Assembly (NCBI GenBank): GCA_002269645.1
Contig: NIVC01000768.1
Coordinates: 62,001 to 126,000 of the forward strand
Reading direction: 5' to 3'
DNA: 64,000 bases
Origin: Macrostomum lignano
Taxonomy: Eukaryota
Under the pieces are notes generated by a model that was not told the origin of the DNA, ran no database searches, and saw nothing but the letters and a program-made list of their open reading frames with translations. Both the position numbers and the translations under genes were made by a program. Shown here in pieces: positions 484 through 49,200 of this stretch (position 1 is the first letter of the stretch; each line of letters begins with the position of its first letter).

Positions 484-2763
484 CGGAAACAGCGGCTGGA
501 AGTTGCTGCCAAAGCTGATCACATTGAACAGGCAGCCAGCCGGCAGGGACTTCAGAAACAGCAGCAAGGCCTCGCTAGCGGCTCGAATATTCGCGCCAGA
601 CATGGAGCCGCTCCTGTCAACAACCAGGATGAACTCCTTCTGCCGGCTAGCCGATGAGTCATCAGCGGGCGACATCAGCTTCTCGCCAAGCATGAGTTCG
701 CACTTGAGCACGCAGCCGCGCAGCACAGACTGCTGCTGGCTGGTGGAAACCGGCTGACGCGACACCAGCAGCTGCGGCAGCGGCCCGCTTGGCTCAGCGT
801 AGCGCAGAATAATTTCTAAATCATCGTCGGAGGCATCGCTGTCGCTGTTTAATATTAATTTAAATTTCCGCCCGGGCTCCAGCCAATCAACTCGGGCTTG
901 GGCGCATTCGACAGACTGGGCCGGGGCTTGGTCGGTCAGGCTGACCTCGATGCTCAGGCGGCCGCTCAGCCAGCCGGAGCTGCCGCCGCCGCTACCGCCG
1001 GCTGCAGACTGCGGTTCGACAAGCATTTCTGGCCTTGTTGGCGGCTGCACATTCGGCTTGCCGACCTCCTGGCGTTGTTTAAGCAATATGAGCTTTTTTA
1101 AATAAGGCATTAGGAGTTTTTATAATTGAAATATCGTTTGAAAAAGCCGCCACTGAAGTATCAGGGAGAAGGGCAAGCAGTGGGTACTGAAGGATCAGGG
1201 AAAAGGACTAGCAGCGGATACTGAAGGATCAGGGGGAGGGCAGCAGTGGATACTGAAGGATCAGGGGAGGGGGGCAGCAGAGGATACTGAAGGATCAGGG
1301 GAGGGCAGCAGTGGATACTGAAGGATCAGGGAGAAGGGAGGACAGCAGCGGATACTGAAGGATCAGGGGAGGGGGGCAGCAGAGGATACTGAAGGATCAG
1401 GGGAGGGGGCAGCAGAGGATACTGAAGGATCAGGGGAGGGGAGGACAGCAGCGGATACTGAAGGATCAGGGGAGGGGGGCAGCAGAGGATACTGAAGGAT
1501 CAGGGGGAGGGCAGCAGTGGATACTGAAGGATCAGGGGAGGGGGGCAGCAGAGGATACTGAAGGATCAGGGGAGGGGAGGACAGCAGAGGATACTGAAGG
1601 ATCAGGGGAGGGCAGCAGAGGATACTGAAGGATCAGGGGAGGGGGCAGCAGAGGATACTGACAGGATCAGGGGAGGGGGACAGCAGAGGATACTGAAGGA
1701 TCAGGGGAGGGGAGGACAGCAGCGGGTACTGAAGGATCAGGGGAGGGGGGCAGCAGAGGATACTGAAGGATCAGGGGAGGGGGACAGCGGAGGATACTGA
1801 AGGATCAGGGGAGAGGGGCAGCAGAGGATACTGAAGGATCAGGGGAGGGGAGGACAGCAGCGGGTACTGAAGGATCAGGGGGAGGGCAGCAGCGGGTACT
1901 GAAGGATTGGGGGACGACAGCAGCGGATACTGAAGGATCAGGGGAGGGGGGCAGCAGAGGATACTGAAGGATCAGGGGGAGGGCAGCAGAGGATACTGAA
2001 GGATCAGGGGAGGGGGGCAGCAGAGGATACTGAAGGATCAGGGGGAGGGCAGCAGAGGATACTGAAGGATCAGGGGAGGGGGGCAGCAGAGGATACTGAA
2101 GGATCAGGGGGAGGGCAGCAGAGGATACTGAAGGATCAGGGGAGGGGAGGACAGCAGAGGATACTGAAGGATTGGGGGAGGGCAGCAGAGGATACTGAAG
2201 GATTAGGGGAGGGCAGCAGCAGCAGCAGCATCAAAGATCGAAGACCCGCTCACCTGTCCAGGCGTATACCTGGGCACCAGTTTCCGCATAATGGTCATCT
2301 TGCACTGGCCAATCTCGGTCTCGTCCAGTTCCAGCAGCGAGGCCATCTTGATAGTCACAGCCGAGCCGGCCTTAACGTTGCCCAAATAGCAGTTGAAAAC
2401 GTCCGATGAGGCGTCGCTTTCGCCGGCCATGGCGGCCGAGAATCCGGCTTGTACAGCCCGCCGAAAAGCCTCGCGAGCCTCCTGTTTGTCGCGAATCTCG
2501 CACTGGATTAGGCGGTCATTCACAGTGGCATCGAATTCGAACAGAGCCGAGGAGTCGTCCTGGGGGAAAGCGAACGATACGTGGCGAGTGTCCTCGACGG
2601 CCCGGCTCTGGTAGGTCAGACAGTAGCGAGCCACGGCCAGGTTGCGGTCTAATTCAATGTTTACGGCGCTTTCGGTGAAGGCAAACGGAGCCTCAGGCGT
2701 GGGAATGTTTGCGCAGCGTAGGCAGTACATTGCGGCTGCATGAAGATTGGAAACCAGTTTCAT
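484..2763 (-). CDS. VWA5A: VIT + von Willebrand factor A domain protein (VWA5A/BCSC-1-like), 3'-truncated by window edge
   Basis: Exon 2763..2254 encodes a VIT domain ([41 protein letters not shown]) and ends CAG|GTGAGC. Exon 1068..484 follows CCAG| and is open throughout, with the MIDAS motif [15 protein letters not shown] and [21 protein letters not shown], ending CCG|GTTGGT. The phase-0 join is consistent. The start could instead be the ATG of MYCLR. Confidence 0.8.
1155..2205. repeat. ~33-bp G-rich minisatellite (GGATACTGAAGGATCAGGGGAGGGGGCAGCAGA) in VWA5A-like intron 1
   Basis: About 30 copies with variable G-run lengths. Confidence 0.97.
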
Positions 2764-4155: not shown

Positions 4156-11081
<6,926 letters not shown>

Positions 11082-11271
11082 GCTTGACAAGCTGGCGGCA
11101 TGAAATTTAGTGCAATTCAGTGCAAATATATGAGATTGTCTCTCACCTCTTTACTGCATGCTTATTGTAAATCATAACTTAGGCTTGCTTTAAACCAATG
11201 AAAGCACTATTTTATACATTTTTCGACACGACAAACAGTCAACAGTCGATGAAAACAAAAACTGTTGAATT

Positions 11272-12620
11272 CCACAATCTCAAAAGCTTCACTTCACAAT
11301 CTCAAAAGCTTCACTTTACAATCTCAAAAGCTTCACTTCACAATCTCAAAAGCTTCACTTCACAATCTCAAAAGCTTCACTTCACAATCTCAAAAGCTTC
11401 ACTTTACAATCTCGAAGCTTCACTTCACAATCTCGATTCCTCGAAGCTTCACTTCAAAATCTCGAAGCTTCACTTCACAATCTCGAAGCTTCACTTCACA
11501 ATCTCGAAGCTTCACTTCACAATCTCAAAAGCTTCACTTCACAATCTCGAAGCTTCATTTCACAATCTCGAAGCTTCACTTCACAATCTCGAAGCTTCAT
11601 TTCACAATCTCGAAGCTTCACTTCACAATCTCAAAAGCTTCACTTTACAATCTCGAAGCTTCACTTCACAATCTCGATTCCTCGAAGCTTCACTTCAAAA
11701 TCTCGAAGCTTCACTTCACAATCTCGAAGCTTCACTTCACAATCTCGAAGCTTCACTTCACAATCTCAAAAGCTTCACTTCACAATCTCGAAGCTTCATT
11801 TCACAATCTCAAAAGCTTCACTTCACAATCTCAAAAGCTTCACTTCACAATCTCAAAAGCTTCACTTCACAATCTCAAAAGCTTCACTTCACAATCTCAA
11901 AAGCTTCACTTCACAATCTCAAAAGCTTCACTTCACAATCTCAAAAGCTTCACTTCACAATCTCAAAAGCTTCACTTCACAATCTCAGAAGCTTCACTTC
12001 ACAATCTCAAAAGCTTCACTTCACAATCTCAAAAGCTTCACTTTACAATCTCAAAAGCTTCACTTCACAATCTCAAAAGCTTCACTTCACAATCTCAAAA
12101 GCTTCACTTCACAATCTCAAAAGCTTCACTTCACAATCTCAAAAGCTTCACTTCACAATCTCAGAAGCTTCACTTCACAATCTCAAAAGCTTCACTTCAC
12201 AATCTCAAAAGCTTCACTTCACAATCTCGAATCTTCACTTCAAAATCCCAAAGCTTCACTTCACAATCTCAAAAGCTTCACTTCACAATCTCAAAAGCTT
12301 CACTTCACAATCTCGAAGCTTCATTTCACAATCTCGAAGCTTCACTTCACAATCTCGAAGCTTCATTTCACAATCTCGAAGCTTCACTTCACAATCTCGA
12401 AGCTTCACTTCACAATCTCGAAGCTTCATTTCACAATCTCGAAAAAGTCGAAACTTCACTTCAGTCTCCACAAGCTCAAAGCTTCACTTAACTAGCTCGA
12501 AATTTCACTCAACAAGCTTGAAACTTCACTTTACAATCTCGAAGCTTCACTCAACAAGCTGGAATCTTCACTTTACAATCTCGGAGCTTCACTCAACAAG
12601 CTGTAAACTTCACAAGCTTG
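11272..12620. repeat. 21/22-bp minisatellite (CACAATCTCAAAAGCTTCACTT) between CTNNBL1 and MSH2
   Basis: About 55 copies with a degenerate right end; explains the spurious 478-aa and 408-aa ORFs. Confidence 0.97.
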
Positions 12621-13099
12621 AAACTAAGTCCTGAAAATTAAACAATTACAGTAAATGAATGAAACGGAAATAAGATCACACGCATATACGATTGAACAAT
12701 GAACATAGAATCATATACTACTATTAGTATCGATCAGTGCTACATTTACTTATTAAGCGCATTATATGAAAAACAGGCCATTATAACTATAGAGCGGACA
12801 AGCACATGATGAATACAGGCTACAATTAGTCCGACTCTGTAACCGACTGTCCCTTCAATATATGCATCAGGTATAATACAAAAGCATGTCAAAGCAGGCT
12901 GACAAAAACTAAAAAAAACTGAAGCGGCACAAAAAGTGACTATTGTGTTTTTTAACAGTGTAATTTGTTTTTTTATATTCCGAAGTTTGTAAAGAAATCT
13001 AAGAGCCCGTTTATAAGTTGAAAACTTATTAACCCATGAGATTTAGCTGACTTTCCTGTGTCCAATGTCTGAATCGGATTTCGAGCACTATTACGAGTA

Positions 13100-13800
13100 A
13101 TAACATCCTTAACAGCACTATTAACAGCATCCTTAGCGGCACTATTAACAGCATCCTTAACAGCACTATTAACAGCATCCTTAACAGCACTATTAACAGC
13201 ATCCTTAACAGCACTATTAACAGCATCCTTGACAGCACTATTAACAGCATCCTTAACAGCACTATTAACAGCATCCTTGACAGCACTATTAACAGCATCC
13301 TTAACAGCACTATTAACAGCATCCTTAACAGCACTATTAACAGCATTCTTGACAGCACTATTAACAGCATCCTTAACAGCACTATTAACAGCATCCTTGA
13401 CAGCACTATTAACAGCATCCTTAACAGCACTATTAACAGCATCCTTAACAGCACTATTAACAGCATCCTTGACAGCACTATTAACAGCATCCTTAGCGGC
13501 ACTATTAACAGCATTTTTGACAGCACTATTAACAGCATCCTTAACAGCACTATTAACAGCATCCTTAACAGCACTATTAACAGCATCCTTAACAGCACTA
13601 TTAACAGCATTCTTGACAGCACTATTAACAGCATCCTTAACAGCACTATTAACAGCATCCTTGACAGCACTATTAACAGCATCCTTAACAGCACTATTAA
13701 CAGCATCCTTGACAGCACTATTAACAGCATCCTTAACAGCACTATTAACAGGATTTTTGTAACAGCACTATTAACAGTATCCTTAACAGCACTATTAACA
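13100..13800. repeat. 24-bp (12+12) minisatellite (TTAACAGCACTATTAACAGCATCC) downstream of CTNNBL1
   Basis: Direct inspection. Confidence 0.97.
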
Positions 13801-13924
13801 GCATCATGAGCCTTAGAATTCCACCTGTCTATATGCTGTTATGAAGAACCTCTAACCATATAGGAAAAATAACCCTAAAGAAGCGCACTCCAGTCCATCT
13901 GACAGTAGTCCTTGGCAGTGAAAT

Positions 13925-16900
13925 TCACTCGGCCAATCCGAATCGTTCTTTAAACACGGCCAGCAGCGGCTCCAGCCGGGCCTTCTCCTCTGCGTCATCG
14001 CTGTGCGCCAGGTGCTCTTTGACAACTCCGTGCACGGCGGGCAGCGGACTGGATCGCATGTTGAACATCTGGCGGACTGGCCGAACAACGCCAGCATCTG
14101 GCGGCGACATGGCGCACACTTGGAGCAGGATTAGGTCCACCAGCTGCAGGGTGAACAGGCCCATTTCCAGTCTGAGGACAAGTAGGAAAATTAAACACTA
14201 GAATAGCCTGGTGGAGTCATAGGATTTGCTTTAAAAAGATGATACTAAATTGGCTTGTCATATTTTTTTCAAATCTCACTAATCTTTTCAACAAGTATGA
14301 TTGCCTTATCAAGACAGGTAATTTTGTAATCCCCTACAGATAAACCGCTAATCTCATAGATAATCTGCTAATCTCCTAAAGAAAATCCGCTTATCTCTTA
14401 CAGAAAATCCGCTAATCTCCTATAGAAAATCCGCTAATCTCCTATAGATAATCTGCTAATCTCCTATAGATGATCAGCTAATCTCCTATAGAAAATCCGC
14501 TAATCTCCTATAGAAAATCCGCTAATCTCCTATAGAAAATCCGCTAATCTCCTATAGAAAATCCGCTTATCTCCTATAGAAAATCCGCTTATCTCCTATA
14601 GAAAATCCGCTAATCTCCTATAGAAAATCCGCTAATCTCCTATAGAAAATCCGCTAATCTCCTATAGAAAATCCGCTAATCTCCTATAGAAAATCCGCTA
14701 ATCTCCTATAGAAAATCCGCTAATCTCCTATAGATGATCTGCTAATCTCCTATAGATGATCAGCTAATCTCCTATACGAGCGTAGATGATCAGTTAATCT
14801 CCTATAGATGATCAGCTAATCTCCTATAGATGATCAGCTAATCTCCTATAGATAATCCGCTAATCTCCTATAGATAATCCGCTTATCTCCTATAGAAAAT
14901 CCGCTAATCTCCTATAGATGATCTGCTAATCTCCTATAGATGATCAGCTAATCTCCTATAGATAATCCGCTAATCTCTTATAGATAATCCGCTTATCTCC
15001 TATAGAAAATCCGCTAATCTCCTATAGATAATCCTATATATAGAGCTCGAGTGAAGCTCGATTGTCTCCTATAGGGATAATTCGCTAATTTCCTATAGAT
15101 AATCCGCTCATCACCTATAGATATAATCCGCTAATCTCCTATAGATGATCTGCTAATCTCCTATGGATAATTCGCTAATCTCCTATCGATAAAATCCACA
15201 AACTACCAACGCCAACAGTGACCCTCTAATCTCAGCAGCGTTAATCCTCTAATTCTTGACAGATTTAATCTGTTAACCAGCCCGCACCGTCTCAGATAGA
15301 CTTCCTCCTCCAGCTCCTCCTCAGTGCTGGCATTCCACAGCTCCGGCTGGCGCCGTTCAGCCAGCAGCCGCCTGTCAGCCGCTTTGACAGAATCACGCCA
15401 TTTGAAATGCAGCTCAGCCAGCCGCTCCATCTTGGCGTGATCGTTCTCAACAAACTTAGCCAGAATCCTAGTCTTGTGCGTAGGCGAATTAGCGCAGTGC
15501 CGCAACAGATTGTGCAATATTGAGCACAGGTGCTCTTCAATCTCTTGTACTGAGAAGCCGCTCTTTTTCGGTTTTGGCGGTCGCATAAACACCGGGAAGA
15601 TGGTTCTTAGGCCGAGAATGTCCACGAATTTTAAGGCGTTATCCGCACCGTCTGGCCCATTCAGTGCGTAGTCCAGCACCTGCGGTGGTTATGTGAGTGA
15701 GTGAGTGAGTGAGTGAGTGAGTGAGTGAGTGAGTCAGTGAGTGAGTGAGTGAGTCAGTGAGTGAGTGAGTCAGTGAGTGAGTGAGTCAGTGAGTCAGTCA
15801 GTGAGTCAGTGAGTGAGTGAGTCAGTCATTCAGTCAGTGAGTCAGTCAGTGAGTCAGTCAGGCTACCTTCAGAGCCGACGGCCTGGCAACCCGCTTCTCC
15901 CTGAGAATCAGATTCATCAATTGCAGCCCTTCGCCTCGCAGGAATCGGTCTTTATTAGCCTTGGCTAGCAGGGCGCTGCACAGACAATTAAAGAGATTCT
16001 CCATCAGCTCGCGCTCCTCAGAATCTGCCGGATCCTGCCGTTTATAATGGGCCAGCTGGTTGAGCAGAATATCAACGCCTTTGAGCTCTCCTAGTAGCAG
16101 ACGATTGGGCTCGGAGCTTTGCAATAGTATGGCCAATAGCTCGCTAGCGTACAGCTTATTGGGACTGAAGCCCCGCTTGCCAATGCGTTTAAGCAAGCAG
16201 GCTAGCAGGCCTTGCTTAGACGCCATCTGCTCCAGGCAGTCCGGTCGGGCCTCGCACAGGTTCTCGATTATGCCTGCGATTGGGGAGAGCAGTGACCAGA
16301 TTGTCAGTCAGAAAGTGGCCAGCTTGTCAGGAAGAGTGACCAGACTGTCAGTCAGAGAGTGACCAGACTGTCAGTCAGAGAGTGACCAGACTGTCAGTCA
16401 GAGAGTGACCAGACTGTCAGTCAGAGAGTGACCAGATTGTCAGTCAGAAAGTGGCCAGCTTGTCAGGAAGAGTGACCAGAGTGTCGGAGAGTGACCAGAT
16501 TGTCAGTCAGATAGTGACCAGATTGTCAGTCAGAGAGTGACCAGATTGTCAGTCAGAGAGTGACCAGACTGTCAGTCAGAGAGTGACCAGATTGTCAGTC
16601 AGATAGTGACCAGATTGTCAGTCAGAGAGTGACCAGACTGTCAGGCAAAGTGACCAGGATTGCTAGTCAGAGAGTGACCAGACTGTCAGTCAGAGAGTGA
16701 CCAGACTGTCAGTCAGAGAGTGACCAGACTGTCAGTCAGAGAGTGACCAGACTGTCAGTCAGAGAGTGACCAGATTGTCAGGCAGAGAGTGACCAGATTG
16801 TCAGTCAGAAAGTGGCCAGCTTGTCAGGAAGAGTGACCAGATTGTCAGTCAGAGAGTGACCAGATTGTCAGTCAGAGAGTGACCAGATTGTCAGTCAGAT

Positions 16901-17879
16901 AGTGACCAGATTGTCAGTCAGAGAGTGACCAGACTGTCAGGCAAAGTGACCAGGATTGCTAGTCAGAGAGTGACCAGTACAGACTGTCAGGGTGACCAGC
17001 TCGTCATTCAACAGAGTCAACAGACGTTTAGCTTAGCTGAACAAGTGAAACAGATCCCAGTGAAGGAGGATTAGCCATACGAGCTAAAATTCTCCAAATA
17101 ACACAAGCAGAGCAACATCACTAACCAAAAGACGAATGCACTCCGTCAGCCTCCTCCTTGATAGTCTCATCCAGACGGTCAAGATTCTGCACCAGCATCA
17201 TGACCAGCTGGGCATCCATCAGTTTGGCAATCAGCTGTTCAGTATCGTCCGGATTCTCGGCCAATACATCAGTGTCTGTCATCTCTTCTATTAGATCAAT
17301 GACAGCAATAGAAATGTCGGTGTTCTCGTGCAGCACCAACTGCAGCAGGGTGTCCAGTACAGGCAGTTCGCACAGCACAGGATAAGCGGCTGGCACAGTG
17401 GGCAAGGTGTGCAGCTCCTGCAGAGCTGAGTGCAGTTCAACCTCGGACTCCATGAACTTCTCCGGATTATCCGAATATTTCACTCGAAGTTCGGCATTCC
17501 TAGCCGCTCGCTTCTCCAGTTGAAGCATCAGCAGGCGCATCCCGGACACGCTGTCAGCCTTTGACGGCTTGGAAGCGTCGGCATCGTCGCTGTCGACTTT
17601 CGCGTCATCGCCCTCCGCATTGTCGTCGGCTTCGAGGGCGCGCAGGACGGCCTCTTTATTAAGGCCAGCTGGCTGCTGCGGCGCCGATGCAGAGGGCGGC
17701 ACTCGAGATGATCGAGCGACGCCAGCGCCGGTACCCGACGCTGAGGCCGAGGCGGCGGCGGCGGCAACGGCCAGACGAGCTCGCTTCCGCTCCACGTAGC
17801 CTGTGTCCGTGTTGTCCGAGAAACGCGTCCGGCGCTGGCCGGGCGTGGCCGGCTTGTAGGACAGAACCTCGGTGATGTC
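13925..17879 (-). CDS. CTNNBL1: Beta-catenin-like protein 1 (Prp19 complex spliceosome subunit), 4 exons, ~600 aa, no in-frame genomic ATG at its 5' end
   Basis: Exons 17879..17126, 16273..15867, 15679..15288, 14171..13925 are frame-consistent. Motifs: DITEVLSYKP, KNAELRVKYSDNPEKFMESEVELH, HENTDISIAVIDLIEEMTD, NKLYASELLAILLQ, LAHYKRQDP, FLRGEGLQLMNLILREK, KFVENDHAKMERLAELHFK, YLRRLEMGLFTLQ. Confidence 0.95.
14330..15190. repeat. 22-bp minisatellite (AATCCGCTAATCTCCTATAGAA) in CTNNBL1 intron 3
   Basis: Direct inspection; same core as the MSH2 intron 2 array. Confidence 0.96.
15694..15860. repeat. (GTGA)n/(GTCA)n microsatellite filling CTNNBL1 intron 2
   Basis: Direct inspection. Confidence 0.95.
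16290..16995. repeat. ~23-bp minisatellite (GAGAGTGACCAGATTGTCAGTCA) in CTNNBL1 intron 1
   Basis: Direct inspection. Confidence 0.96.
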
Positions 17880-18009
17880 CTGCAAATGTAAGGGAAATTT
17901 GATATCTCGATTCTCGATGGTAAAGGAATTGGGCCGGAGCCTACACGTAGCTTCAGTTTCAGGCGCCTTGGAATGTTAGCAGTGAGAAGCAGGGTCTGAG
18001 AATTTAGTA

Positions 18010-18280
18010 TCTGGGAGGGTTGTAGCACGGCAACTGAGGATCTGGGAGGGTGGCAGCACGACAACTGAGGATCTGGGAGGGTGGCGGTGGCCCAGCAACT
18101 GAGGATCTGGGAGGCTGGTAGCACAGCAACTGGGGATCTGGGAGGCTGGCGGTGGCCCAGCAACTGAGGATCTGGGAGGCTGGCCCAGCAACTGAGGATC
18201 TGGGAGGCTGGCAGCACAGCAACTGAGGATCTGGGAGACTGGCTGCACAGCAACTGAGGATCTGGGAGGCTGGCGGTGGC
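18010..18280. repeat. ~30-bp minisatellite (CAACTGAGGATCTGGGAGGCTGGCAGCACAG) between ATAD5-like and CTNNBL1
   Basis: Direct inspection. Confidence 0.93.
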
Positions 18281-18307
18281 GTCCATATAATAAAAATGGC
18301 AACTAAA

Positions 18308-18313
18308 TTTATT
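18308..18313 (-). terminator. Putative polyadenylation signal AATAAA of the ATAD5-like gene
   Basis: TTTATT on the + strand, about 230 nt after the ATAD5-like stop, in AT-rich sequence. Confidence 0.5.
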
Positions 18314-18541
18314 TTAAATCTTTTAAAATATCAAACGACGATTAAAAAAAGTATTTTTTGTACTGTCCAAAATTTCAACTAACGAAGGCGTTAATAAATA
18401 AATTAATATACATATAAGTAGTAATAACACACATCCATAAATGCACATTGCGTCAATTGTTAAATTGATGTAAATTTAGTTAACAGAAAACACAGATTGC
18501 CAAAAAATGAGCACACATAAAATGCATCTAGCGAACGGTAT

Positions 18542-21500
18542 CTAGGACTCTGAGCTTGCCAACGTGTTGCATTTCAACAGGTAGTGCATAGCGGAATCGC
18601 TGAGCGACAATTTGAGTTTACGATCAACTAATCGAACAAGCGAACGCCTGTTGAAGCCAGCGGATGGGGCCAGGCAGCGGGCGAACTCAGCCCGGTCCAA
18701 GGACTCCTGACGGCCGAACGGGCGACAGCTGGGCAGCGGCTGGCGAAGGTCTCGGAGTAGACGACCGAGACCTGGCCGCGGCTCTATCAGTGGCAGTTGG
18801 TTGCTAGGTAACTTAGCTGATCCTCCTCCTGACAGCGACTGGCCAATCTGGTTGCTAGGCAACTCGGCTGATCCTCCTCCTGACAGCGACTGGCCAATCT
18901 GGTTGCTAGGCAACTCGGCTGATCCTCCTCCTGACAGCGACTGGCCAATCTGGTTGCTAGGCAACTCGGCTGATCCTCCTCCTGACAGCGACTGGCCAAT
19001 CTGGTTGCTAGGCAACTCGGCTGATCCTCCTCCTGACAGCGACTGGCCAGTCTGGTTGCTAGGCAACTCGGCTGATCCTCCTCCTGACAGCGACTGGCCA
19101 GTCTGGTTGCTAGGCAACTCGGCTGATCCTCCTCCTGACAGCGACTGGCCAATCTGGTTGCTAGGTAAAGAAAGCCGAGCTAACAGGCTGAGCCCCGACG
19201 ACGCCAACTGATCAGCCGCCTCGGCGCATCGGCGACGACGTCTACGCAGCCAGTCGGCGAAGGCGAGGACGTCGGCAGATTGCGAAATCGTATTCAGCGT
19301 AGAAGCAGCAGAATTAGTTCCTCCTAGAAGCAGCAGTGCAGCATCAATAGGCGCCGGCGGTACCGCAATCGACAATCGACAATCACCGGCGCCAGATTCC
19401 GGCAATACAAAGTGCACCAGGTTCAACAGTTGGCGAATGTCGCCACGGCAGGCGTTGACCAGTTCGATTGCCGCGTCGGCCGACAATCGACAGCCAAGAG
19501 CCAGGCAGACCACGCGAGCGTAGGCCGCCACGAGAGGTCGACTGGGCCGGCGTAGCTTAAAAATCGGCGCCGCGTCGGTCAGGCCGAGACCGCGTCGTAG
19601 CGACTCGGCGTCGGCGGCGGCCAACAGCAGCGGCTTGCGACTGGATGCGCAGACGCCGGACACTAGGCGACGCAACGATGGCTCGTCGTCCAACGGTTGA
19701 TCGGCATCGTCTAGCAAGATTAGCCAGGAGCTGCTGACGGATAGGGCCTGCGGATTTGTGAATGAGTTGGTTGGCGCTTTCGCAAATTAAAGCACGCACA
19801 CGTGTGGGCACATCAGGAATCGAACCCGGGACTTTTAACAGCCTAATCCAAGATACGTTTGCCAAATTAATGGAGCTTTTGTATATGGTAGCAAGGCTGG
19901 CACAGTAGCATTTAATTTCGTTCATAGCATCACCCATAGATCTTATATTCCCTAAATGCGCCACTGTATTGCAGCAATAGGGAAAGTGCGACCGCTGTTT
20001 TTCGTCACTTGTGCGAAAAAAGCCGACATGGGTTGCTTAAATTTTGAGTTCAGTAGCTTAGGGACGCTATTTTTTGAGAATGTGATAGAACTTTTCATGA
20101 AATAAATAAAAAGCTACTCAATCAAATTAAAAATGATGCATGCACTGTAGAGACTACTGACGAAATTGAGTTCAGTAGCTGATTCTCGCGCTGTCGCGAG
20201 TTGCTTCTTGCTTCTTTCTTTTTTCTTGCATGAAACTTTAGACTTTGAGATTAGGATTTAATTTTTTGCCTCTGTTGACAGGCCCTTCTAGTCGTCAGTT
20301 TTAGATAGAAACTAGCCCAATAAAACACGTTTTAATGGCATTAGCACGTGATGTTTTGCAGGTGTTTCGCAATTTTTTAATAACATCGTTGAGTTTTATG
20401 TAAATGAAACTAGTTTGCTATGATGGCCGCTATAAACATTTTATACAGTTGCTGTATTCGATTTTATTTGACACAAATTGCGTCAATTTGCTTTACAAGC
20501 GCTAATTTGCAGGCGCTCTGCACTGACCCCTCTCAGGCTGCTGCTGCCTGCCACTCCCGCCTGTTCTGCGAGCGCGTTTGTGGAATGGGTCTCCCCTCTG
20601 GGCCTAAACCTAAATAAACTGTAGATACGAGATAGCTCGTATTAACATATAAATAATAAATTATGTATTTATTTAGAATTCCAGTGCCATTTGACAGCCT
20701 GGGTCTGAGTTCAGGATGTCAAAATTAAAGTTAATGTGCAGACTTGCCATCAGCGCCAGTAGTGAGACGATGTTGCCCGCAAATAGTGTGCCTAAAACCT
20801 TCCTGCGAATATTTTTATACAGTAAATTCACTCAATAGGCCATGAACCGCAAGCTTACAGGTGCGCTATCGAGCGAATCAGTCTCATCTTCAGCGTCCGA
20901 ATCGTTGCGATGACGCCGCTTTCGCTCCACCTGACAACACGTGGCCGCCTGGTGCAGCCGCTGCGCCAGCTTAGCCCCGTGTCGCCGCTCCTCGGCGCCA
21001 ATTTCAAAAACGCGCAAGCCATGCTGACGCGCAATCGCCCGGGCTACGCAGCTCCGGCCGGGGCCTTCAATTAGCGCCACGCGATTCGAGCAACTACTAT
21101 TCGAAACTGCAGCTGAAGCCAGCCAATCTGACAAATTTCTCACAGCTTCAGCGTTGCCAAGCACGCCAGCTGCGCAGCGAGGCGCCAAAAGTTCGTCAAG
21201 AGAGCGACGGGAGCAAGGTAGCCCTCTATTGTTATTAGCATTAGTATTAGCAATAGCCGCACGCAGCTCGGTCAGGTAGCGACCAGCTGGGAAACCTGGC
21301 TGCAATGCGCGCACATTGGCCAACTCAGCGGCTGTATTGAAATGTTCGCCAACAATTGGCGGGCGGTCCAACCGGAACTGGACAACAGCAGCGGCGGAGT
21401 CAATCAAGCTAGCCGAGTTCCCTCGATCGCCATAGTTATAAAGTACACTGCCAGTAGTACAGTCAGCAGTGCACACGCAAACTAAACAGTTGTCACTGAA

Positions 21501-21824
21501 CAGCGATGCTGGAGCTTGCCAGCCAACGTGGATGCACCAAGCGGGCGGGAAAGGCCAACAGAATCTGGAAGCAGAAACTCCCTTATCCGAGTCCTTCTCA
21601 TTAGCTGGCCCAGGCTGACAAAAGTCAGCAGCAAGGAATGCTTGACGACGCACCAGTGGCGCGGAGGATAGCAGCTTTCTACCTTCGCTTTGCTCATTAT
21701 CATTACAATTTTCAACAATAAAGCAGGACGATTCGAGCGCACTGGGTGCCGATTTTGCTGGCAGAAAATAGTCGGCTATGCGACGACTGCAGGCGGCTGA
21801 GGAACGTCGCTGCTGCTTTGGCAT
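18542..21824 (-). CDS. ATAD5: ATAD5/ELG1-like RFC large subunit (PCNA unloader), divergent and short (~723 aa), 2 exons
   Basis: Exons 21824..20859 (CCT|GTAAGC) and 19747..18542 (CCGCAG|GCC), phase 0. The AAA+ clamp-loader region ELLAPRCAAGVLGNAEAVRNLSDWL...VALIEGPGRS..RAIARQHGLRVFEIGAEERRHGAKLAQRLHQAATCCQV resembles ATAD5 (FEVNASSQRSG..LKEATQSHQV). Also Walker-B-like LILLDDAD, SSRKPLLL and CRGDIRQLLNLVHF. Confidence 0.75.
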
Positions 21825-22700
21825 GCGGAGGCTTCAACCTTAATAGTGATATTGGCTGGCTGAAAGAAACAATACAGTCAGCTGGGGAATTTTAGTCAAT
21901 AAGTCCTCTTGTCTTGGTTTTGTGGCTTTTTTGTCTAGATATAAGCCTGCTAAGTTAGTAGGAATAGTGCTAAGTTGCCTATGCCTTTTTGGCATGATAT
22001 TTAAACTAAGCAGAAATTGTATATATATTCTATTTGTGTAAAAAATTCTATTTGCTTTGTTAGAAAACCTACAGATTGTTTTTTGAAAATTGACATTTTG
22101 TCTACCATAATCACTGCTAATATTTAGCTGGACCAGTTTTAGAGCATGTCAAAATATGCTATAGATAAGATGACATATGTTCTTACTAGTATAAATATCA
22201 AGTATTAATCAAGTGAGATAAAACAATGATGTTTTTTATAAAAGTATTAAATTGTTTGCTTGTTGTCTGTCTTTATTTAGACTCATTTGCACTGTATTAT
22301 AGTTCCAAGGCAGATACATAGCTTGTACTCGTATCTCCCTTCTAAGAATTTCTAGACTTCTATTATTTTTTAGATAATCAATTAAGCATATTTATATAAT
22401 ACATATACTTGTGATGGGCTTCATCTCTATTTCTTAGAAAATAGTATTTCTAAATTTCTGCCTATTCTGTTATATTGTACAAATATTAAAAATAGTTTGT
22501 ATATTCTATATATTATTGTCAGATTCTTGTTTCAAACAATAAGGAAATAAGGAAATTTTTAGTACAAATAGGAACAAGATAAAACCAAATTAAATAAACT
22601 CACTTTTTGATCCTATTTTCTCCTCTTAATTATTCAAGCTATTCTAATATTTTTCCAGCTATTCTATTTGGAGATAAAATTGATAATAAGCCTTAGGGCT

Positions 22701-23749
22701 CCCGTTGGAAAAGTTATGCACCTGCAGAGGCACAAAAGAGGCACTTTGGTGGCCTATTTCGTGTGTGTTTTAGAAATGCACCTGAGTGCACCTTTTATGC
22801 CTAAATGTCACCAATATTTTTGAAAAGAGGCATGAAAGGTGTAAAATTGGTGAAGTGGTCAGGCAGTAAGTGAATTCTTAATTTTGATTGGCTGCGGCAG
22901 TAGGGGCAGTAAAGGTGCTGAAGGGGCGCAGAAAGTGCACAAAAGGTGAATCAGAGGTGCATAAGGTGTACATGTTGCGGCATAAATATATATACAGGTG
23001 CATTTCCAAAACACGCTTGAAATAGACCCCAAAAGTGCCTCTTCTGTGCACCTCGCTCACCTTTCATGCCTATGCACGAATTAACGCATTAATAATCAGT
23101 AACAAAAAATTAACTGAGAGTTACATACTCATATATTGCACGCACAGATTGAACATAGAAAAGCTTTTTTACACCTATACTAATTGCTGCTATCCCCTTC
23201 CTAATCCTGACAAACCACAAAAGTAAACATTTCCTGTACTGGTAAGTTGTAATAACTTTCAAATCTCAGGAAAAGTTCCGAAAAGTGATGAAAAGCTTTG
23301 AATCTGTTTAAAGAATAGTAAGGAAAAGTAGCAAAGAATTTTCGCAAGTTGGAATGCCCCTTGCATTGCCTCTATACCTAAAGTGCCCACTGTGCACCAT
23401 TTGTTCACCTTTTGTGCCTCCAGTGCACACTGTACACTTTTTATGCACCTCCACCACAGCGCACCTTTTTTCACCTTTCACTCCACCAATGCCCCCAATT
23501 CCTACTTTGTTCACCTTTTGTGCCTCCAATACACACTGTGCACCTTTAATACACCGAACTCCCCTATGACACCTGTGTCCCTACCACCTATTTTGTGCCT
23601 TATATTCACCTTCTGACCCTGCAGAGGCACTCAGGTGAACACGCGGTGCACAAGTGACACAAAATAGGCATAAAAGAGGCGAAAGTGAGGCAGAAGGTGT
23701 AAAACTCTTCACCTTTCATGCCTACTTTAAAAACTCAAAATCCAACGGG
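22701..23749. mobile_element. Non-autonomous DNA transposon, 9-bp TIR CCCGTTGGA, 3-bp TSD GCT (CMC/EnSpm-like, tentative)
   Basis: CCCGTTGGA at 22701 and TCCAACGGG ending 23749, each flanked by GCT; the interior is rich in GCACC/GGTGC motifs. Confidence 0.65.
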
Positions 23750-30347: not shown

Positions 30348-33300
30348 TTAGATCAGGTGCTCCTGGCCGTAGTAACGATAGCACGCCCTGACAACCTGGC
30401 GCAGAGCGCTAGTATAACAAAGGTCCCGCCGATCATCCGGCGCCCGACGGTCGTCCTTAATGCTAAGGAACGGCATGACGTCCAGCGGCCACCAGGCCGG
30501 CCGCTTGTCGCTGCAGCCCCAACGAATCCGACGCGGCCTACGGCGACGCGGTTCAACATCTTCGGTACCCCAGTTCCACAGGCCGACCAGGTGGAGCAGT
30601 AGTCTGCGGATTGAATTAACGTCCAGTTCGTCAAGGCGAGCCGGACGGCCGCGACGGACCAGAACGGGCAGGCGAACATTCGCTGCGCGTTGGCTGCTGC
30701 TGTCAGAGTTTGACGGACTTCTTGACGGGTCGTCCTGTAATTGGGAGACATCAGTGACTCGACGACGATGGTCTACAATTTCTGGCGATCGAGGTCCCGA
30801 TGCACGAGCTGCAGTCTGATCCGATAGCTGTTCTTGCAGCTCCGGCAGCGTTGGTTGATGCGGCTGAGGATCCGTAGACCGCGACTCCAGCTTCACGATG
30901 CAGGTTTTAGCGCACCTATGCGGGTGGATTCAGACAGTCGTGAATTTACAGCTAGAAAGTAAAATGACACTGTCATAATCGCTAGTGCTACGAGATGCCT
31001 GTGGGCACCCTGGCATAACGCCTTTGGTAACATCGTCCCGCAACCAGTGCTGAGGCGATTCTGCCCATTCCACTGACTCCTGAGCTACGAGTACATAAAA
31101 GTGCGCCAATACTGTACGCAGGCAGGCACTCACGCACACGCTCACACAGGGTGTACAGCGGCCCTGACTATCTAATCGTCAGGCTTGTACACTCTATGTG
31201 CCTTGAAACAACCCACCGCGACCAATTTTCGCACACAAGATCCAAATAATCCAAATGAGCACCTGGAAGCAATCGGGGCCGAAATAGACAGAGTTTTCGC
31301 TGGTGCACGAATCCACATTGCGCTCTGCTGCGGCTGTGGCGGCGGCGGAGGCGGTGGATCTGCGACCGCTCCAGTCTGAGTGCCAAGAGACCGCAGCTGT
31401 ACTGGGAAAACTGGAGCCTCAACCAGTTTAGAAAGATTTCGAAACTCAACCAGTTCAGAAAGATTTCGAGACTCAACCAGTTCAGAAAGATTTCGAGACT
31501 CAACCAGTTCAGAAAGATTTCGAGCCTCGCCAGCCGCCACGTCAACTGGGTGCAGCTCCGATTCAGGTAAAACTTCCTCAGCTTCTAAGCAGGGCCCAAA
31601 GTCTGACTCAGACACTAGCCGCTGCTGATTAGACTCAATGATTGGCAGTTCTAATAAGTGAGATTGGCCATAGAATTTGTAACAATGGCGCACAACTTCG
31701 CGCAGAGCGTCCGCGTGGTGACGGATCAGGGCGCGTTGGTCCGATGTGCGCCAATCCTGCGGGAGCACGGGAGGTGTAGCGGAGCCAATACTTTCATAGT
31801 CGTACAGAGCAAACGAATTTACTTAATGGTTTCGTTGTTAATTTGTTAAGGGCTGTTTTGATAGTTAGAGTATTAACTGTCATTGTAACTGTATTAACTG
31901 GACGATGAATCAAAACACTGTATGGTTTGAAGGAACTGCACATGTACTGCATTGATCTGCATTTTTTCAAGCCAGCTAAAAGATTGGTTAGAGACAGGTT
32001 ACAGACAGGTATGACTTTCTATTCGTAAATTTGAACGTGACCCAACCTTAACTCGAGCTGACTTAGCGTCCTTCTTCCTGCCAAGGCGTTTGGTAGAAGT
32101 TTTTAACTTAAAGGTCAGGTATAGAATCTAGCGCGTGACTGCGGGTCAGAGAGAGAAGAAAAAAGAGAGAAGAGGGGAGAGGAGGGGAGATGAGAGAGGA
32201 GGGAGAAGATGAGAGGGAAGATGAGAGAGAGGGAAGAGGAGGGGAGAGAACGGAGATAATAAAGGAGAGAGGAGGAAAGAGGAGAGAAGAGATAAGAGAG
32301 GAGATGGGAGAGGAGGGGAGGGGAGGGGAGATAAGAGAGGACATAAAAAAGGGAGCTGAAGAGACACAAGAATTTGTGAAGCTTCAAAAGAACCCGAGGG
32401 CCGGATATTGAAAACCCTGATCTATACCCACCCGGTAGCATCTTCTTATTAAGCGTAATTTGAACGAACCAGAGAAACCATATGCTGACCTAAGTCGAAT
32501 CGAAAAGTGATAATTGAGAATGATGCATGCAGCATATTGTACTCAAATGGGAAAAAGCCCAGGTGCTAGTTATCTGTAGCCGTGGGTTGACTATGAGACA
32601 CCATCAGAACAATTAAGGTACACAGTTTAATTAACGTCTTTCGGCCCATTTTCACCCTGGTATATGTTGAAGAATATCTGAAAAGTCAGAATAACTGGCA
32701 ATTGTTGGAGTGGTGCAGAACAGATGGTTTCAATATATTCTTGAATTTCTTGTGCCTGAGTTACTAGGCTCCGATGCAGCAACAAAAATTGTCAAGAGGC
32801 AGGCGGGGGTGAATTCCAACCACTCCTTGGTCGTTCTACTGTTAACGACAAGATAGGCATTTGACGAAAAAATGGCAATGGTAGAAATGTAAAAAAGGAA
32901 TAGAGAAAGAAATTAAAAAATTCCTTTTCAAGAGGCCAATTAGGAGCGAGAACGAAGCGCATTAAGGAAGGCTGGGAGGGGTGCTGGGTTGAGTTGCATC
33001 GCTGTCAGTTTTCTCTCTCTCTCTCTCTCTCTCTTTCAGTATAAAGATGGCTTCTCGGCCTGCAAAGTAGTTATGGGTTTTGTCTCAATAAAGTTCTGAC
33101 TTGACTTGCTTTTTCAGATACTAAATTACCTCAATTAACAAGCACGCCTAGCTAGAAAAGCAGCAAATGTTGAAGCTCTACGCTTTCATTTTGCTAACTA
33201 ACGCGGTTACAGCCGTCTTCGCCAGCTGCAGAACGAAGTGGTGCAAACTCGGCGACCGCTGCCTCAACGAGACCGTCGCTCAAGGCTGCTGGAAGGCGCC

Positions 33301-36300
33301 CAGCGTGGCGCCCTGCATGATGAAGGCGGGCGCCAGTCCCGGAGACCTGGTTGCGCAGTGGAATGAGCGCACCGCTGCGTGCTGCCTCTTCCGCTACCAG
33401 ACGGTGTGCCGGCACATTCAGGCCCGCAACGCGACCGAGTCTCTGAGCGACAGCCGGTGCAGCGTGTACCGCTTCTCGTCTCTGTCGAGATGCTCCGAGT
33501 CGGTCGGTGCGCGCTTTGTGGCCGCGTGGCTGGCAGGAGGCGGCAGCCGGTTTGACAACCTCGTGTGCCAGGCCGAGCCCGGCAACTACCGGCTGCACAG
33601 CGAGAACGTGGACTGGACTGAGGACGGAGCCAAGTTCAACGGGGCGTGTTCGTACGCGGCTACCGAGGATGTGGGAAACGTAGTGAACGGGGGCTCCTTC
33701 ACCTGGCTTCTGCGGCTGAAGAGGCAGCCGAGACTCCAGCCGTTCATGGAAGCCGGCCAGTGCGACAACTTAGGGAATTTTGGCCCGCATTTCTGGGAGT
33801 ACAGCATGCCGAACATGCTGTTCAATCGTTCTCCAGGCCTAACAGGTGCAAAAGCATCTCAAATTCTCCCAAACAATCCGAACACTTGGATCGACATCGG
33901 ACTGAGCCAATCAGAAACAGATAGGCAAATGTTTTTCAATGGCTCATTTGTGCTGTCAACTGGAGCGACCGCTCCGACCTCGAGCTTCTGCTACATTATT
34001 CAAATTGGTCGGCGTTGGCCAAATCATTTTCTACAGGGCACCGTTAGGGCCGTTGCGATCGCGAACTTCTCCATGACAGCGGCGGAGATTCAGCGGTTCT
34101 TTTCAACGCTGCCCTGAGCCTTGAAAAACGCTGAACTTATAAAGGATTAAATTTTGTTGCTGAACAAATTTAAAATAATTTTAATACGCGTACAGCGCCT
34201 ACAATACTTATCTAGCAATCTTAGCCCCTTATAGGGCAGGTAATAAAGAAAGTAGAATATTTTTAAAAACTAATCAAAAAAGCTTGCAGGGCGTACACTG
34301 CACTCTGTGGCCCTCACTATTCATGTCCCACTCTTTTGCCAAAACTTTTTTTTACCAATTATCGACCAATCACGTTTTATTCCCCAAAACCCAATATCGA
34401 CTAATAAATATACTGAGCAAACAAAGTCATACAGAAGCCACCTTTCTCGGCACGCAAACTTGCATTATTACAAAAGTCTAAGTTAGCAGCAACCCCACTG
34501 CGAGCCTTGGCATTCTCCATTGAGGCACTAAATTAACCCCCTACACCTTAAAAGTTATGGTCTAACCGTACCAAAGTAAACCTAACTCTCCTTTTGATGT
34601 TTGTCATCGCAACAACCCCCCGTGAGCCTTGGCATCTCAGCAACCCTCTCCCCGTGAGCCTTGGCATCTCAGCAACCCTCTCCCCGTGAGCCTTGGCATC
34701 TCAGCAACCCTCTCCCCGTGAGCCTTGGCATCTCAGCAACCCTCTCCCCGTGAGCCTTGGCATCTCAGCAACCCTCTCCCCGTGAGCCTTAGCATCTCAG
34801 CAACCCCCTCCCCTCGTGAGCCTTAGCATCTCAGCAACCCCCTCCCCTCGTGAGCCTTGGCATCTCAGCAACCCTCTCCCCGTGAGCCTAGGCATCTCAG
34901 CAACTCCCTCCCCCCGTGAGCCTTGGCATCTCAGCAACCCTCTCCCCGTGAGCCTTGGCATCTCAGCAACCCTCTCCCCGTGAGCCTTGGCATCTCAGCA
35001 ACCCTCTCCCCGTGAGCCTTGGCATCTCAGCAACCCTCTCCCTGTGAGCCTTGGCATCTCAGCAACCCTCTCCCCGTGAGCCTTGGCATCTCAGCAACCC
35101 TCTCCCCGTGAGCCTTGGCAACCCCTCTCCCGTGAGCCTTGGCATCTCAGCAACCCTCTCCCTGTGAGCCTTGGCATCTCAGCAACCCTCTCCCCGTGAG
35201 CCTTGGCATCTCAGCAACCCTCTCCCTGTGAGCCTTGGCATCTCAGCAACCCTCTCCCCGTGAGCCTTGGCATCTCAGCAACTCCCTCCCCCCGTGAGCC
35301 TTGGCATCTCAGCAACCCTCTCCCCGTGAGCCTTAGCATCTCAGCAACCCCCTCCCCTCGTGAGCCTTAGCATCTCAGCAACCCCCTCCCCTCGTGAGCC
35401 TTGGCATCTCAGCAACCCTCTCCCCGTGAGCCTAGGCATCTCAGCAACTCCCTCCCCCCGTGAGCCTTGGCATCTCAGCAACCCTCTCCCCGTGAGCCTT
35501 GGCATCTCAGCAACCCTCTCCCCGTGAGCCTTGGCATCTCAGCAACCCTCTCCCCGTGAGCCTTGGCATCTCAGCAACCCTCTCCCTGTGAGCCTTGGCA
35601 TCTCAGCAACCCTCTCCCCCGTGAGCCTTGGCATCTCAGCAACCCTCTCCCCGTGAGCCTTGGCAACCCCCTCTCCCGTGAGCCTTGGCATCTCAGCAAC
35701 CCTCTCCCTGTGAGCCTTGGCATCTCAGCAACCCTCTCCCCGTGAGCCTTGGCATCTCAGCAACCCTCTCCCTGTGAGCCTTGGCATCTCAGCAACCCTC
35801 TCCCCGTGAGCCTTGGCATCTCAGCAACTCCCTCCCCCCGTGAGCCTTGGCATCTCAGCAACCCTCTCCCCGTGAGCCTTGGCATCTCAGCAACCCTCTC
35901 CCCGTGAGCCTTGGCATCTCAGCAACCCTCTCCTAGTGAGCCTTGGCATCTCAGCAACCCTCTCCCCGTGAGCCTTGGCATCTCAGCAACCCTCTCCTAG
36001 TGAGCCTTGGCATCTCAGCAACCCTCTCCCCGTGAGCCTTGGCATCTCAGCAACCCTCTCCTAGTGAGCCTTGGCATCTCAGCAACCCTCTCCCCGTGAG
36101 CCTTGGCATCTCAGCAACCCTCTCCCTGTGAGCCTTGGCATCTCAGCAACCCTCTCCTAGTGAGCCTTGGCATCTCAGCAACCCTCTCCCCGTGAGCCTT
36201 GGCAACCCCCTCCCCCGTGAGCCTTGGCATCTCAGCAACCCTCTCCCTGTGAGCCTTGGCATCTCAGCAACCCTCTCCCCGTGAGCCTTGGCATCTCAGC

Positions 36301-42442: not shown

Positions 42443-49200
<6,758 letters not shown>

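What the first reader, a model, noticed from the sequence alone, without database searches (positions are those of the whole stretch)
17860..17960. CTNNBL1 has no start codon of its own: candidate spliced-leader-donated AUG
The first exon begins TTACATTTGCAG|GAC ATC ACC GAG GTT CTG TCC TAC (DITEVLSYKP). This aligns with residue 2 onward of the conserved CTNNBL1 N-terminus (human MDVGELLSYQP). In frame, a TAA lies about 30 codons upstream with no ATG in between, and I found no ATG|GT mini-exon between here and the ATAD5 stop. The next in-frame ATG is over 100 codons inside. Flatworm spliced leaders end in AUG, which was shown in Schistosoma to serve as initiator Met. Trans-splicing here would give exactly M-D-I-T-E-V-L-S-Y, making the gene dependent on trans-splicing for translation.
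Basis: partly seen in the sequence, partly recalled or inferred. Interest (0 to 1): 0.82.

Follow-up and report, generated by a model that had tools for sequence, protein, structure and literature searches.

The report
Gene borrows start codon by trans-splicing
The flatworm Macrostomum lignano's CTNNBL1 gene has no start codon in the genome; its first exon begins at codon 2, right after a trans-splice acceptor, so the AUG that ends the spliced leader most likely supplies the initiator Met. This mechanism is already known in flatworms, so the gene is a clean new example, not a new phenomenon.

Summary
The gene lies on the minus strand. Its acceptor is ...CATTTGCAG| (AG at 17881-17880). Exon 1 starts at 17879 with GAC ATC ACC = DITEVLSYKP. 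This aligns with residues 2-11 of the conserved CTNNBL1 N-terminus; 102 of 118 orthologues start M[DEN][VI].[ED][LIVF]L. An in-frame TAA lies 33 codons upstream with no ATG between. The first in-frame ATG is codon 114.

The window is 100% identical to M. lignano assembly Mlig_3_7. The published M. lignano spliced leader (SL) is 35 nt and ends ...TTGCATG. Its published trans-acceptor motif, [T/C]TNCAG, occurs once in the 662-nt spacer, at this site.

GenBank annotates both genomic copies (PAA77058.1, PAA85852.1) as 'partial' 599-aa proteins whose CDS starts at this base. That is what the published pipeline, which cuts transcripts at mapped SL reads, would produce.

The other possible cis donors are weak.

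I could not retrieve any SL-to-exon junction read, so trans-splicing here is inferred, and so is translation from the SL AUG. SL-AUG initiation was shown in Schistosoma (Cheng 2006). Verdict: interpretation supported; new member of a known kind; modest interest.

The parts
17880..17885 (-). Trans-splice acceptor TTGCAG (AG = 17881-17880), preceded by the pyrimidine-rich tract aaatttcccttacat.
   Evidence: Sequence. It matches the published M. lignano trans-acceptor motif [T/C]TNCAG. It is the only YTNCAG in the 662-nt spacer. It is identical in the second genomic copy, L002.
17126..17879 (-). CTNNBL1 coding exon 1. It begins with codon 2 (GAC = Asp) and contains no ATG before codon 114.
   Evidence: The GenBank CDS of PAA77058.1 starts at this base. 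Donor is TTG|GTTAGT.
15867..16273 (-). CTNNBL1 coding exon 2.
   Evidence: tblastn with orthologues plus splice sites. The model reproduces P0039 exactly.
15288..15679 (-). CTNNBL1 coding exon 3.
13925..14171 (-). CTNNBL1 coding exon 4, including the stop codon TGA.
17976..17978 (-). In-frame TAA, 33 codons upstream of the acceptor. It closes the frame, and no ATG follows it before the acceptor.
17538..17540 (-). First in-frame genomic ATG (codon 114 of the genomic ORF). Three out-of-frame ATGs (17620, 17608, 17584) precede it.
17880..18290 (-). Presumed outron: the spacer from the upstream gene's poly(A) region to the acceptor. The last ~130 nt are unique sequence.
   Evidence: This is an inference; the outron's 5' limit is not defined.
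18009..18280 (.). 31-nt-unit tandem repeat (~8.5 copies) inside the spacer. Copy number differs between the two genomic copies.
18284..18286 (-). It lies in a 15-nt stretch that is deleted in the second copy.
18308..18313 (-). AATAAA poly(A)-signal-like hexamer of the upstream gene, 229 nt after its stop.
   Evidence: It is conserved in L002.
18542..21824 (-). Upstream same-strand gene (ATAD5-like; 655 aa in GenBank). It has its own ATG at 21824 and its stop is TAG 18544-18542.

Best explanation
Proposed mechanism:
1. The M. lignano CTNNBL1 pre-mRNA is trans-spliced at the acceptor TTGCAG| (first exon base 17879). It is possibly transcribed as the downstream cistron of an operon with the ATAD5-like gene.
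2. The 35-nt spliced leader ends in AUG. This AUG is joined directly and in phase 0 to GAC AUC ACC...
3. The mature mRNA therefore reads ...UUGC AUG GAC AUC ACC GAG GUU... and encodes M-DITEVLSYKP..., a 600-aa CTNNBL1 with the canonical N-terminus.
4. The genome holds no initiator codon for this N-terminus, so full-length protein depends on trans-splicing.

Shown here:
- the sequence anatomy;
- the organism's identity;
- the homology boundary;
- the absence of a genomic ATG;
- that the published annotation starts a 5'-open CDS at this base in both copies.

Inferred:
- that SL reads map to this acceptor;
- that ribosomes start at the SL AUG (by analogy with Schistosoma mansoni);
- operon membership.
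For: - Anatomy.
- Homology starts at residue 2: 102 of 118 orthologues start M[DEN][VI].[ED][LIVF]L, and alignment A2 places D at column 2.
- Organism: window is 100% identical to M. lignano Mlig_3_7.
- SL and motif: the SL ends in ATG and the trans-acceptor motif is [T/C]TNCAG (PMC8629364). That motif occurs once in the spacer, at the acceptor.
- Annotation: GenBank PAA77058.1 and PAA85852.1 are both 'partial', both 599 aa, and both begin DITEV with the CDS starting at the acceptor. The annotation pipeline cuts transcripts at peaks of SL-containing reads and then calls ORFs (PMC5730564). A 5'-open ORF that starts exactly at AG| is what that procedure yields.
- Predicted mRNA: the SL AUG is the first AUG and opens a 600-aa ORF. 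Three out-of-frame AUGs with a purine at -3 precede the internal in-frame AUG.
- Gene predictors on the older ML2 assembly could not find a start. They produced chimeric models (P0001, P0160) or a model that starts with D (P0040).
- Precedent: Cheng et al. 2006, as cited. Wiberg et al. 2023 note the Macrostomum SL's final ATG as a 'translation start codon'.
- Operon: the spacer is 662 nt, or 390 nt after subtracting the 272-nt tandem repeat. This is under the published 1-kb operon criterion.
Against: - No SL-exon junction read or cDNA was seen. An exact look-up of M+599 aa found nothing. A scan of metagenome contigs for ATG+exon found nothing. The third protein search returned nothing.
- The two genomic copies differ by 3 nonsynonymous and 1 synonymous change in codons 1-113, against 0 nonsynonymous and 6 synonymous in codons 114-599. 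So the N-terminal part is less constrained. All 3 nonsynonymous changes lie in the low-complexity linker, which is also unconserved among orthologues.
- The copies are only 0.56% diverged, so their agreement says little about long-term conservation.
- The -3 position of the SL AUG is U, a weak Kozak context, although +4 is G.
Confidence: 0.85

Rival explanations
1. A cis-spliced upstream exon supplies the ATG. There are two forms of this idea. One is a small exon in the spacer, such as ATG 18286 or ATG 18434/18413 with donor TTC|GTTAGT at 18383. The other is read-through from the ATAD5-like gene using the donor CTT|GTTCGA (~18650), which would give a fusion protein ...AGFNRRSL|DITEV as in the ML2 model P0160.
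For: In-frame ATG-to-GT combinations do exist in the spacer. The gene's own cis donors are also non-consensus (GTTAGT, GTAGCC, GTGCGG). UniProt A0A1I8FYJ3 (P0160) is an in-frame fusion model of this kind.
Against: - Every candidate donor scores poorly, and there is no ATG|GT mini-exon.
- ATG 18286 lies in a 15-nt stretch deleted in the second copy. The GTTAGT at 18383 reads GTTAAT there.
- Any such exon would add 2-114 residues before D, whereas 102 of 118 orthologues have Met directly before D.
- The transcript-based Mlig_3_7 annotation ends the upstream gene at its own stop and starts CTNNBL1 at the acceptor in both copies.
- P0001 and P0160 come from an older assembly. The P0001 model carries apparent frameshifts, and its ATG is absent from the corresponding window sequence.
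Confidence: 0.05
2. The N-terminal 113 codons are not translated, or are translated only at trace level. The functional protein starts at the internal in-frame ATG (17540) or at a non-AUG codon. On this reading the DITEVLSYKP match is a relic.
For: Nonsynonymous differences between the two copies are confined to codons 1-113 (3 nonsynonymous and 1 synonymous, against 0 and 6 in the rest). The conserved ARM/CTNNBL domain (Pfam match 99-565) would survive almost intact.
Against: - The N-terminal motif is retained against orthologues from other animal phyla, and the 113-codon frame stays open. This is unexpected for untranslated sequence.
- A basic RR...RKRAR stretch follows the motif. It is in the position where orthologues have KR-rich segments (A2).
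- In the SL-spliced mRNA the SL AUG comes first, and three out-of-frame AUGs in good context lie before the internal AUG.
- The 3 nonsynonymous changes fall in a low-complexity linker that also varies in all orthologues.
Confidence: 0.07
3. Assembly or annotation artefact: a real genomic ATG or first exon is missing or mis-assembled at this locus.
For: The M. lignano assemblies are repeat-rich, and the ML2 models show apparent frameshifts.
Against: Two independent loci in Mlig_3_7 (NIVC01000768.1 and NIVC01000302.1) have the same acceptor and the same lack of an ATG. Their flanks are contiguous and 93-100% identical. ML2-derived models share the same DITEV boundary.
Confidence: 0.02

Closest known systems
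Flatworm SL 3'-terminal AUG used as initiator methionine (Cheng, Cohen, Ndegwa and Davis, J Biol Chem 2006; Schistosoma mansoni)
   Same: The SL ends in AUG. It is joined in frame to an ORF that lacks its own start, so the conserved N-terminus is completed by the SL Met. In S. mansoni more than 40 cDNAs were reported to need it.
   Different: The species is different: a free-living, early-branching macrostomorph. The gene is different. In M. lignano neither the junction read nor translation from the SL AUG was shown by any source I could reach.
slORFs: open reading frames created by SL addition (slORFfinder, PMC9851317)
   Same: The start codon is contributed by the leader and the ORF is completed only after trans-splicing.
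   Different: slORFfinder cases in nematodes, Oikopleura dioica and trypanosomes mostly use near-cognate NUG codons and often create new or alternative ORFs. Here a canonical AUG restores the ancestral N-terminus of a conserved protein.
M. lignano SL trans-spliced genes and operons (Wudarski 2017; Ustyantsev and Berezikov 2021)
   Same: The acceptor motif, the same-strand upstream gene, a repeat-adjusted spacer under 1 kb, and tandem repeats that inflate the spacer all match the published description.
   Different: Those papers do not discuss donation of the start codon. No occurrence of 'ATG', 'methionine' or 'initiat' was found in PMC8629364, and 'AUG' and 'start codon' each occur once, only about clearing out-of-frame AUGs from 5' UTRs. 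I found no per-gene list that includes this gene.

Membership tests
SL-AUG-initiated flatworm mRNA (Cheng et al. 2006 type) | The organism performs SL trans-splicing with a leader that ends in AUG. | tested here: met
   Window is 100% identical to M. lignano Mlig_3_7. The published SL is ...TTATTGCATG (PMC8629364; PMC10468722).
SL-AUG-initiated flatworm mRNA (Cheng et al. 2006 type) | The mRNA of this gene is trans-spliced at the acceptor immediately before the ORF. | tested here: inconclusive
   Support is indirect.
- The acceptor matches YTNCAG and is unique in the spacer.
- The GenBank 5'-open CDS starts exactly at AG| in both copies.
- The pipeline cuts transcripts at SL-read peaks.

No junction read was seen.
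SL-AUG-initiated flatworm mRNA (Cheng et al. 2006 type) | The SL AUG is in frame with the ORF, with no intervening stop. | tested here: met
   SL plus exon gives AUG|GAC AUC... and a 600-aa ORF. The SL AUG is the only AUG in the SL and the first in the mRNA.
SL-AUG-initiated flatworm mRNA (Cheng et al. 2006 type) | No genomic in-frame AUG is able to encode the conserved N-terminus. | tested here: met
   TAA lies 33 codons upstream with no ATG between. There is no ATG|GT exon and only weak cis alternatives. The first in-frame ATG is codon 114.
SL-AUG-initiated flatworm mRNA (Cheng et al. 2006 type) | Translation actually initiates at the SL AUG. | not testable with these tools
   This needs proteomics, Ribo-seq or a reporter. 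It is inferred from S. mansoni.
CTNNBL1 (beta-catenin-like protein 1) orthologue | Full-length CTNNBL domain and the conserved N-terminal MD[VI]GELLS[YF][KQ]P motif. | tested here: met
   Pfam PF08216 E=6.8e-160, covering residues 99-565. Human CTNNBL1 PDB chains score E~1e-146. The N-terminal motif is present minus the Met.
Downstream gene of an M. lignano operon (Ustyantsev and Berezikov criteria) | Adjacent same-strand genes, repeat-adjusted distance under 1 kb, and the second gene SL trans-spliced. | tested here: inconclusive
   The genes are on the same strand. The spacer is 662 nt, minus a 272-nt tandem repeat = 390 nt. Trans-splicing of the second gene is inferred only. Co-transcription was not tested.

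The most novel reading that the evidence does not exclude
Loss of the genomic ATG makes CTNNBL1 obligately dependent on SL trans-splicing for its expression. By established knowledge, CTNNBL1 is itself a spliceosome-associated (Prp19-complex) factor. The same situation may be widespread among the many '5'-partial' M. lignano gene models. If so, a sizeable class of conserved Macrostomum proteins is complete only after trans-splicing, and the expression of some splicing factors is coupled to trans-splicing capacity.
Probability: 0.12. Interest if true: 0.55.

Novelty: new member of a known kind. Interest (0 to 1): 0.3.

Why it matters
The case is practical more than conceptual.
- It explains why this conserved gene is deposited as 'partial', and why ab initio predictors invented chimeric N-termini or fused it to the neighbouring gene. 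Macrostomum annotation pipelines should append the SL Met when a 5'-open ORF starts in phase at a mapped SL site.
- M. lignano is, according to PMC8629364, the only flatworm with stable transgenesis. That makes this tidy locus a good substrate for testing SL-AUG initiation in vivo in a free-living flatworm.
- It does not change what is known about the mechanism.

Tried and rejected
- SL sequence or SL RNA gene in the window: none. Only two unrelated 11-mer matches were found.
- Direct transcript evidence:
  - Protein search with exon 1 missed the identical GenBank protein. The search with the N-terminal 143 aa returned nothing. The word index is lossy, so these negatives carry no weight.
  - Exact look-up of M+599 aa for both copies: not in the collection.
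  - Metagenome scan for ATG+exon: 0 hits.
- Per-gene trans-splicing lists: CTNNBL1, the Mlig IDs and the PAA accessions were not found in any text or supplement held.
- Cheng et al. 2006 is not held, so I cite it only through papers that cite it.
- The gene name 'g5' as evidence for a polycistron: rejected. The naming prefix reflects sequence clusters, and the second copy is named 'Mlig011045g1'.
- Bacterial-style TTG start at 17885 from the ORF listing: irrelevant for a eukaryote.
- Other flatworm orthologues could not be isolated. The best 120 hits are all non-flatworm animals.

Full report
**1. What is in the sequence**

The feature is on the minus strand. Read 5'->3', the sequence is ...aaatttcccttacatttgcag|GACATCACCGAGGTTCTGTCCTACAAGCCG. 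The acceptor AG is at window 17881-17880 and the first exon base is at 17879.

In the exon's frame the upstream sequence reads C-TAA-HSKAPETEATCRLRPNSFTIENRDIKFPLHLQ|DITEVLSYKP. The stop is at 17978-17976, 33 codons upstream, and no ATG lies between it and the acceptor.

The first in-frame ATG of the exon is codon 114, at 17540-17538.

The spacer between the acceptor and the stop of the upstream same-strand gene (TAG 18544-18542) is 662 nt. It contains only seven ATGs and no ATG|GT mini-exon. No ATGGT occurs anywhere up to 21900 on this strand.

**2. The gene**

tblastn with orthologues plus splice-site inspection gives four coding exons: 17879-17126, 16273-15867, 15679-15288 and 14171-13925. 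Together they make 599 codons plus a stop.

The product matches Pfam CTNNBL (PF08216) at E=6.8e-160 over residues 99-565. It matches human beta-catenin-like protein 1 chains in the PDB at about 1e-146.

Among the best 118 orthologues from other animals, 102 begin M[DEN][VI].[ED][LIVF]L, typically MD[VI]GELLS[YF][KQ]P. In a MAFFT alignment the genomic ORF DITEVLSYKP starts at column 2, one residue after the Met (A2).

Four things therefore coincide: the limit of homology, the AG| boundary, reading phase 0, and the absence of exactly one residue, Met.

**3. The organism and its spliced leader**

A 23,955-nt locus fetched from GenBank assembly GCA_002269645.1 (Macrostomum lignano Mlig_3_7, NIVC01000768.1) is 100% identical to window 3925-27879. 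Window coordinate w corresponds to record coordinate w+62000.

What the literature says about M. lignano:
- It has one 35-nt spliced leader, CGGTCTCTTACTGCGAAGACTCAATTTATTGCATG.
- 30-39% of its genes are trans-spliced.
- The enriched motif at trans-acceptors is [T/C]TNCAG.
- Operons are defined as same-strand neighbours with a repeat-adjusted gap under 1 kb whose second gene is trans-spliced (PMC8629364; PMC5730564).

The acceptor here, TTGCAG, fits the motif. The motif occurs about once per 444 nt on this strand of the window. In the 662-nt spacer it occurs exactly once, at the acceptor.

No SL RNA gene lies in the window.

**4. Published annotation**

The GenBank protein PAA77058.1 ('BOX15_Mlig001294g5, partial', 599 aa) is identical to my model. 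It begins DITEV, and its CDS spans exactly 17879-13925.

A second genomic copy is on NIVC01000302.1: PAA85852.1, 'Mlig011045g1, partial', 599 aa. It also starts DITEV at the same acceptor.

The annotation was built by assembling transcripts, cutting them at peaks of SL-containing reads (the TBONE pipeline) and then calling ORFs. An ORF can be left 5'-open only if it runs to the transcript's 5' end. So in both copies the transcript model starts within 0-2 nt of AG|. That is what a mapped trans-splice site produces.

This is strong but indirect evidence. I did not see the reads.

Neighbouring genes show how this annotation behaves:
- The MutS-like gene's 5'-open CDS starts 2 nt after a TTCCAG acceptor in copy 2. 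In the window copy it starts at a non-AG position.
- The upstream ATAD5-like gene has its own ATG.

**5. How other predictors coped**

Models on the older ML2 assembly illustrate the missing ATG.
- A0A1I8G9T2 starts with D.
- A0A1I8FAJ8 prepends MPRASTGVPL. This is taken from another frame inside the upstream gene's last exon, where the window has no ATG.
- A0A1I8FYJ3 fuses the whole upstream gene to DITEV through the weak donor CTT|GTTCGA.

**6. Alternatives**

Cis-spliced ATG exons were enumerated. All in-frame ATG-to-GT combinations in the spacer have poor donors.

Alignment of the two genomic copies shows the following (A1):
- The last ~130 nt of the spacer and the acceptor are conserved apart from one substitution.
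- The best-looking donor, GTTAGT at 18383, reads GTTAAT in copy 2.

Any such exon would also add residues between Met and Asp, unlike 102 of 118 orthologues.

Initiation at the internal ATG is disfavoured. In the predicted SL-spliced mRNA the SL AUG is the first AUG and opens a 600-aa ORF. Three out-of-frame AUGs with a purine at -3 (17620, 17608, 17584) come before the internal one.

One observation points the other way. The two copies differ at 10 of 1800 coding positions. There are 3 nonsynonymous changes and 1 synonymous change in codons 1-113, against 0 nonsynonymous and 6 synonymous in the rest. All three nonsynonymous changes lie in the low-complexity linker, which is unconserved in every orthologue. 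The first 41 codons are identical between copies. I read this as a relaxed linker, not untranslated sequence. The copies are too similar (0.56% divergence) to settle it.

**7. Mechanism**

Shown:
- the anatomy;
- the species;
- the SL sequence (from the literature);
- the frame and the 600-aa ORF after joining.

Inferred:
- The SL is spliced to 17879.
- The SL AUG, 33 nt from the cap in the context UGC AUG G, is the initiator. This would give MDITEVLSYKP....
- The gene may be the downstream cistron of an operon with the ATAD5-like gene. The supporting details are:
  - an AATAAA 229 nt after that gene's stop;
  - then a 272-nt tandem repeat of a 31-nt unit;
  - then ~130 nt of unique outron;
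  - a repeat-adjusted gap of 390 nt.

The upstream gene's best solved-structure match is human ATAD5, but only at E=8e-7, and its Walker A motif is degenerate (GPGRSCVA).

**8. Comparison with what is known**

Use of the flatworm SL's terminal AUG as initiator Met was described for Schistosoma mansoni by Cheng et al. 2006. It is repeated as common knowledge in later flatworm papers. In that study the SL AUG was in frame in 28% of trans-spliced transcripts, and more than 40 cDNAs required it.

For Macrostomum, Wiberg et al. [quoted passage not shown] The dedicated M. lignano trans-splicing study does not discuss AUG donation. I found no paper or supplement that mentions this gene.

The case is therefore a new, very clean member of a known kind.

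**9. Verdict**

- Observation: confirmed.
- Interpretation: supported, confidence about 0.85.
- Missing step: a junction read or an N-terminal peptide.
- Novelty: new member of a known kind.
- Interest: about 0.3. The value is mainly for annotation practice, and as a convenient locus for testing SL-AUG initiation in a transgenic flatworm.

Noticed in passing
window ~11087-11110 (minus strand); L002 ~23135-23150: At the 5' end of the downstream MutS-like gene (929 aa; Pfam MutS_I/III/IV/V), the second genomic copy has a TTCCAG acceptor 2 nt before the annotated 5'-open CDS (AAATTTCCAG|CCGCCAGCTTGTCAAGCATG). The window copy reads AAATTTCATGCCGCC at the same place, that is, CAG replaced by ATG. 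One copy may therefore have lost its trans-splice acceptor and gained an out-of-frame upstream ATG.
   Followed up: partly
window 17126-17879 compared with L002 10001-10754, and the rest of the CDS: The two CTNNBL1 copies differ at 10 of 1800 coding nt. All 3 nonsynonymous changes (codons 42, 92, 97) fall in the N-terminal low-complexity linker. Codons 114-599 have 6 synonymous changes and none nonsynonymous.
   Followed up: yes
window 18542-21824 (minus strand): The upstream gene (655 aa in GenBank) is only weakly ATAD5-like (best PDB hit human ATAD5, E=8e-7). It has no Pfam hit, a degenerate Walker A (GPGRSCVA), and a 51-nt coding tandem repeat of 7.2 copies (18798-19165). My two-exon reconstruction of 655 aa is not the deposited sequence, so the true exon structure differs.
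   Followed up: partly
window 10500-19165: Introns and spacers are packed with tandem repeats of 21-24-nt units (11273-12445, 13104-13805, 14327-15192, 16286-16977) plus a (GTGA)n tract (15693-15858). These produce long spurious ORFs on both strands, and their copy number differs between the two genomic copies.
   Followed up: no
L002 16729-19143: In the second genomic copy, a 756-aa gene with a weak hAT-dimerisation match (Dimer_Tnp_hAT) is annotated between CTNNBL1 and the MutS-like gene. No such gene is annotated between them in the window copy.
   Followed up: no
window 21825-21870 (minus strand): A TTTCAG acceptor-like motif lies 35 nt upstream of the ATAD5-like gene's ATG. If the SL were spliced there, its AUG would be out of frame and would open a short ORF overlapping the main start. 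There is no evidence either way that this site is used.
   Followed up: no
window 2203-2763, 30348-38319, 47496-48197, 59438-63901 (all minus strand): Other content seen in Pfam scans of long ORFs: a VIT-domain exon, NRF1-like DNA-binding exons, an FUT8 (alpha-1,6-fucosyltransferase) exon, and a GC-rich element with an endonuclease/exonuclease/phosphatase ('Endonuclease-reverse transcriptase') domain, probably a non-LTR retrotransposon, with many overlapping ORFs.
   Followed up: no
The search for homologous proteins: Tool behaviour: the word-indexed protein search missed the 100%-identical GenBank protein when queried with exon 1 alone or with the N-terminal 143 aa. It found the protein only with the full-length query. 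Negative results from this tool on low-complexity queries are unreliable.
   Followed up: yes
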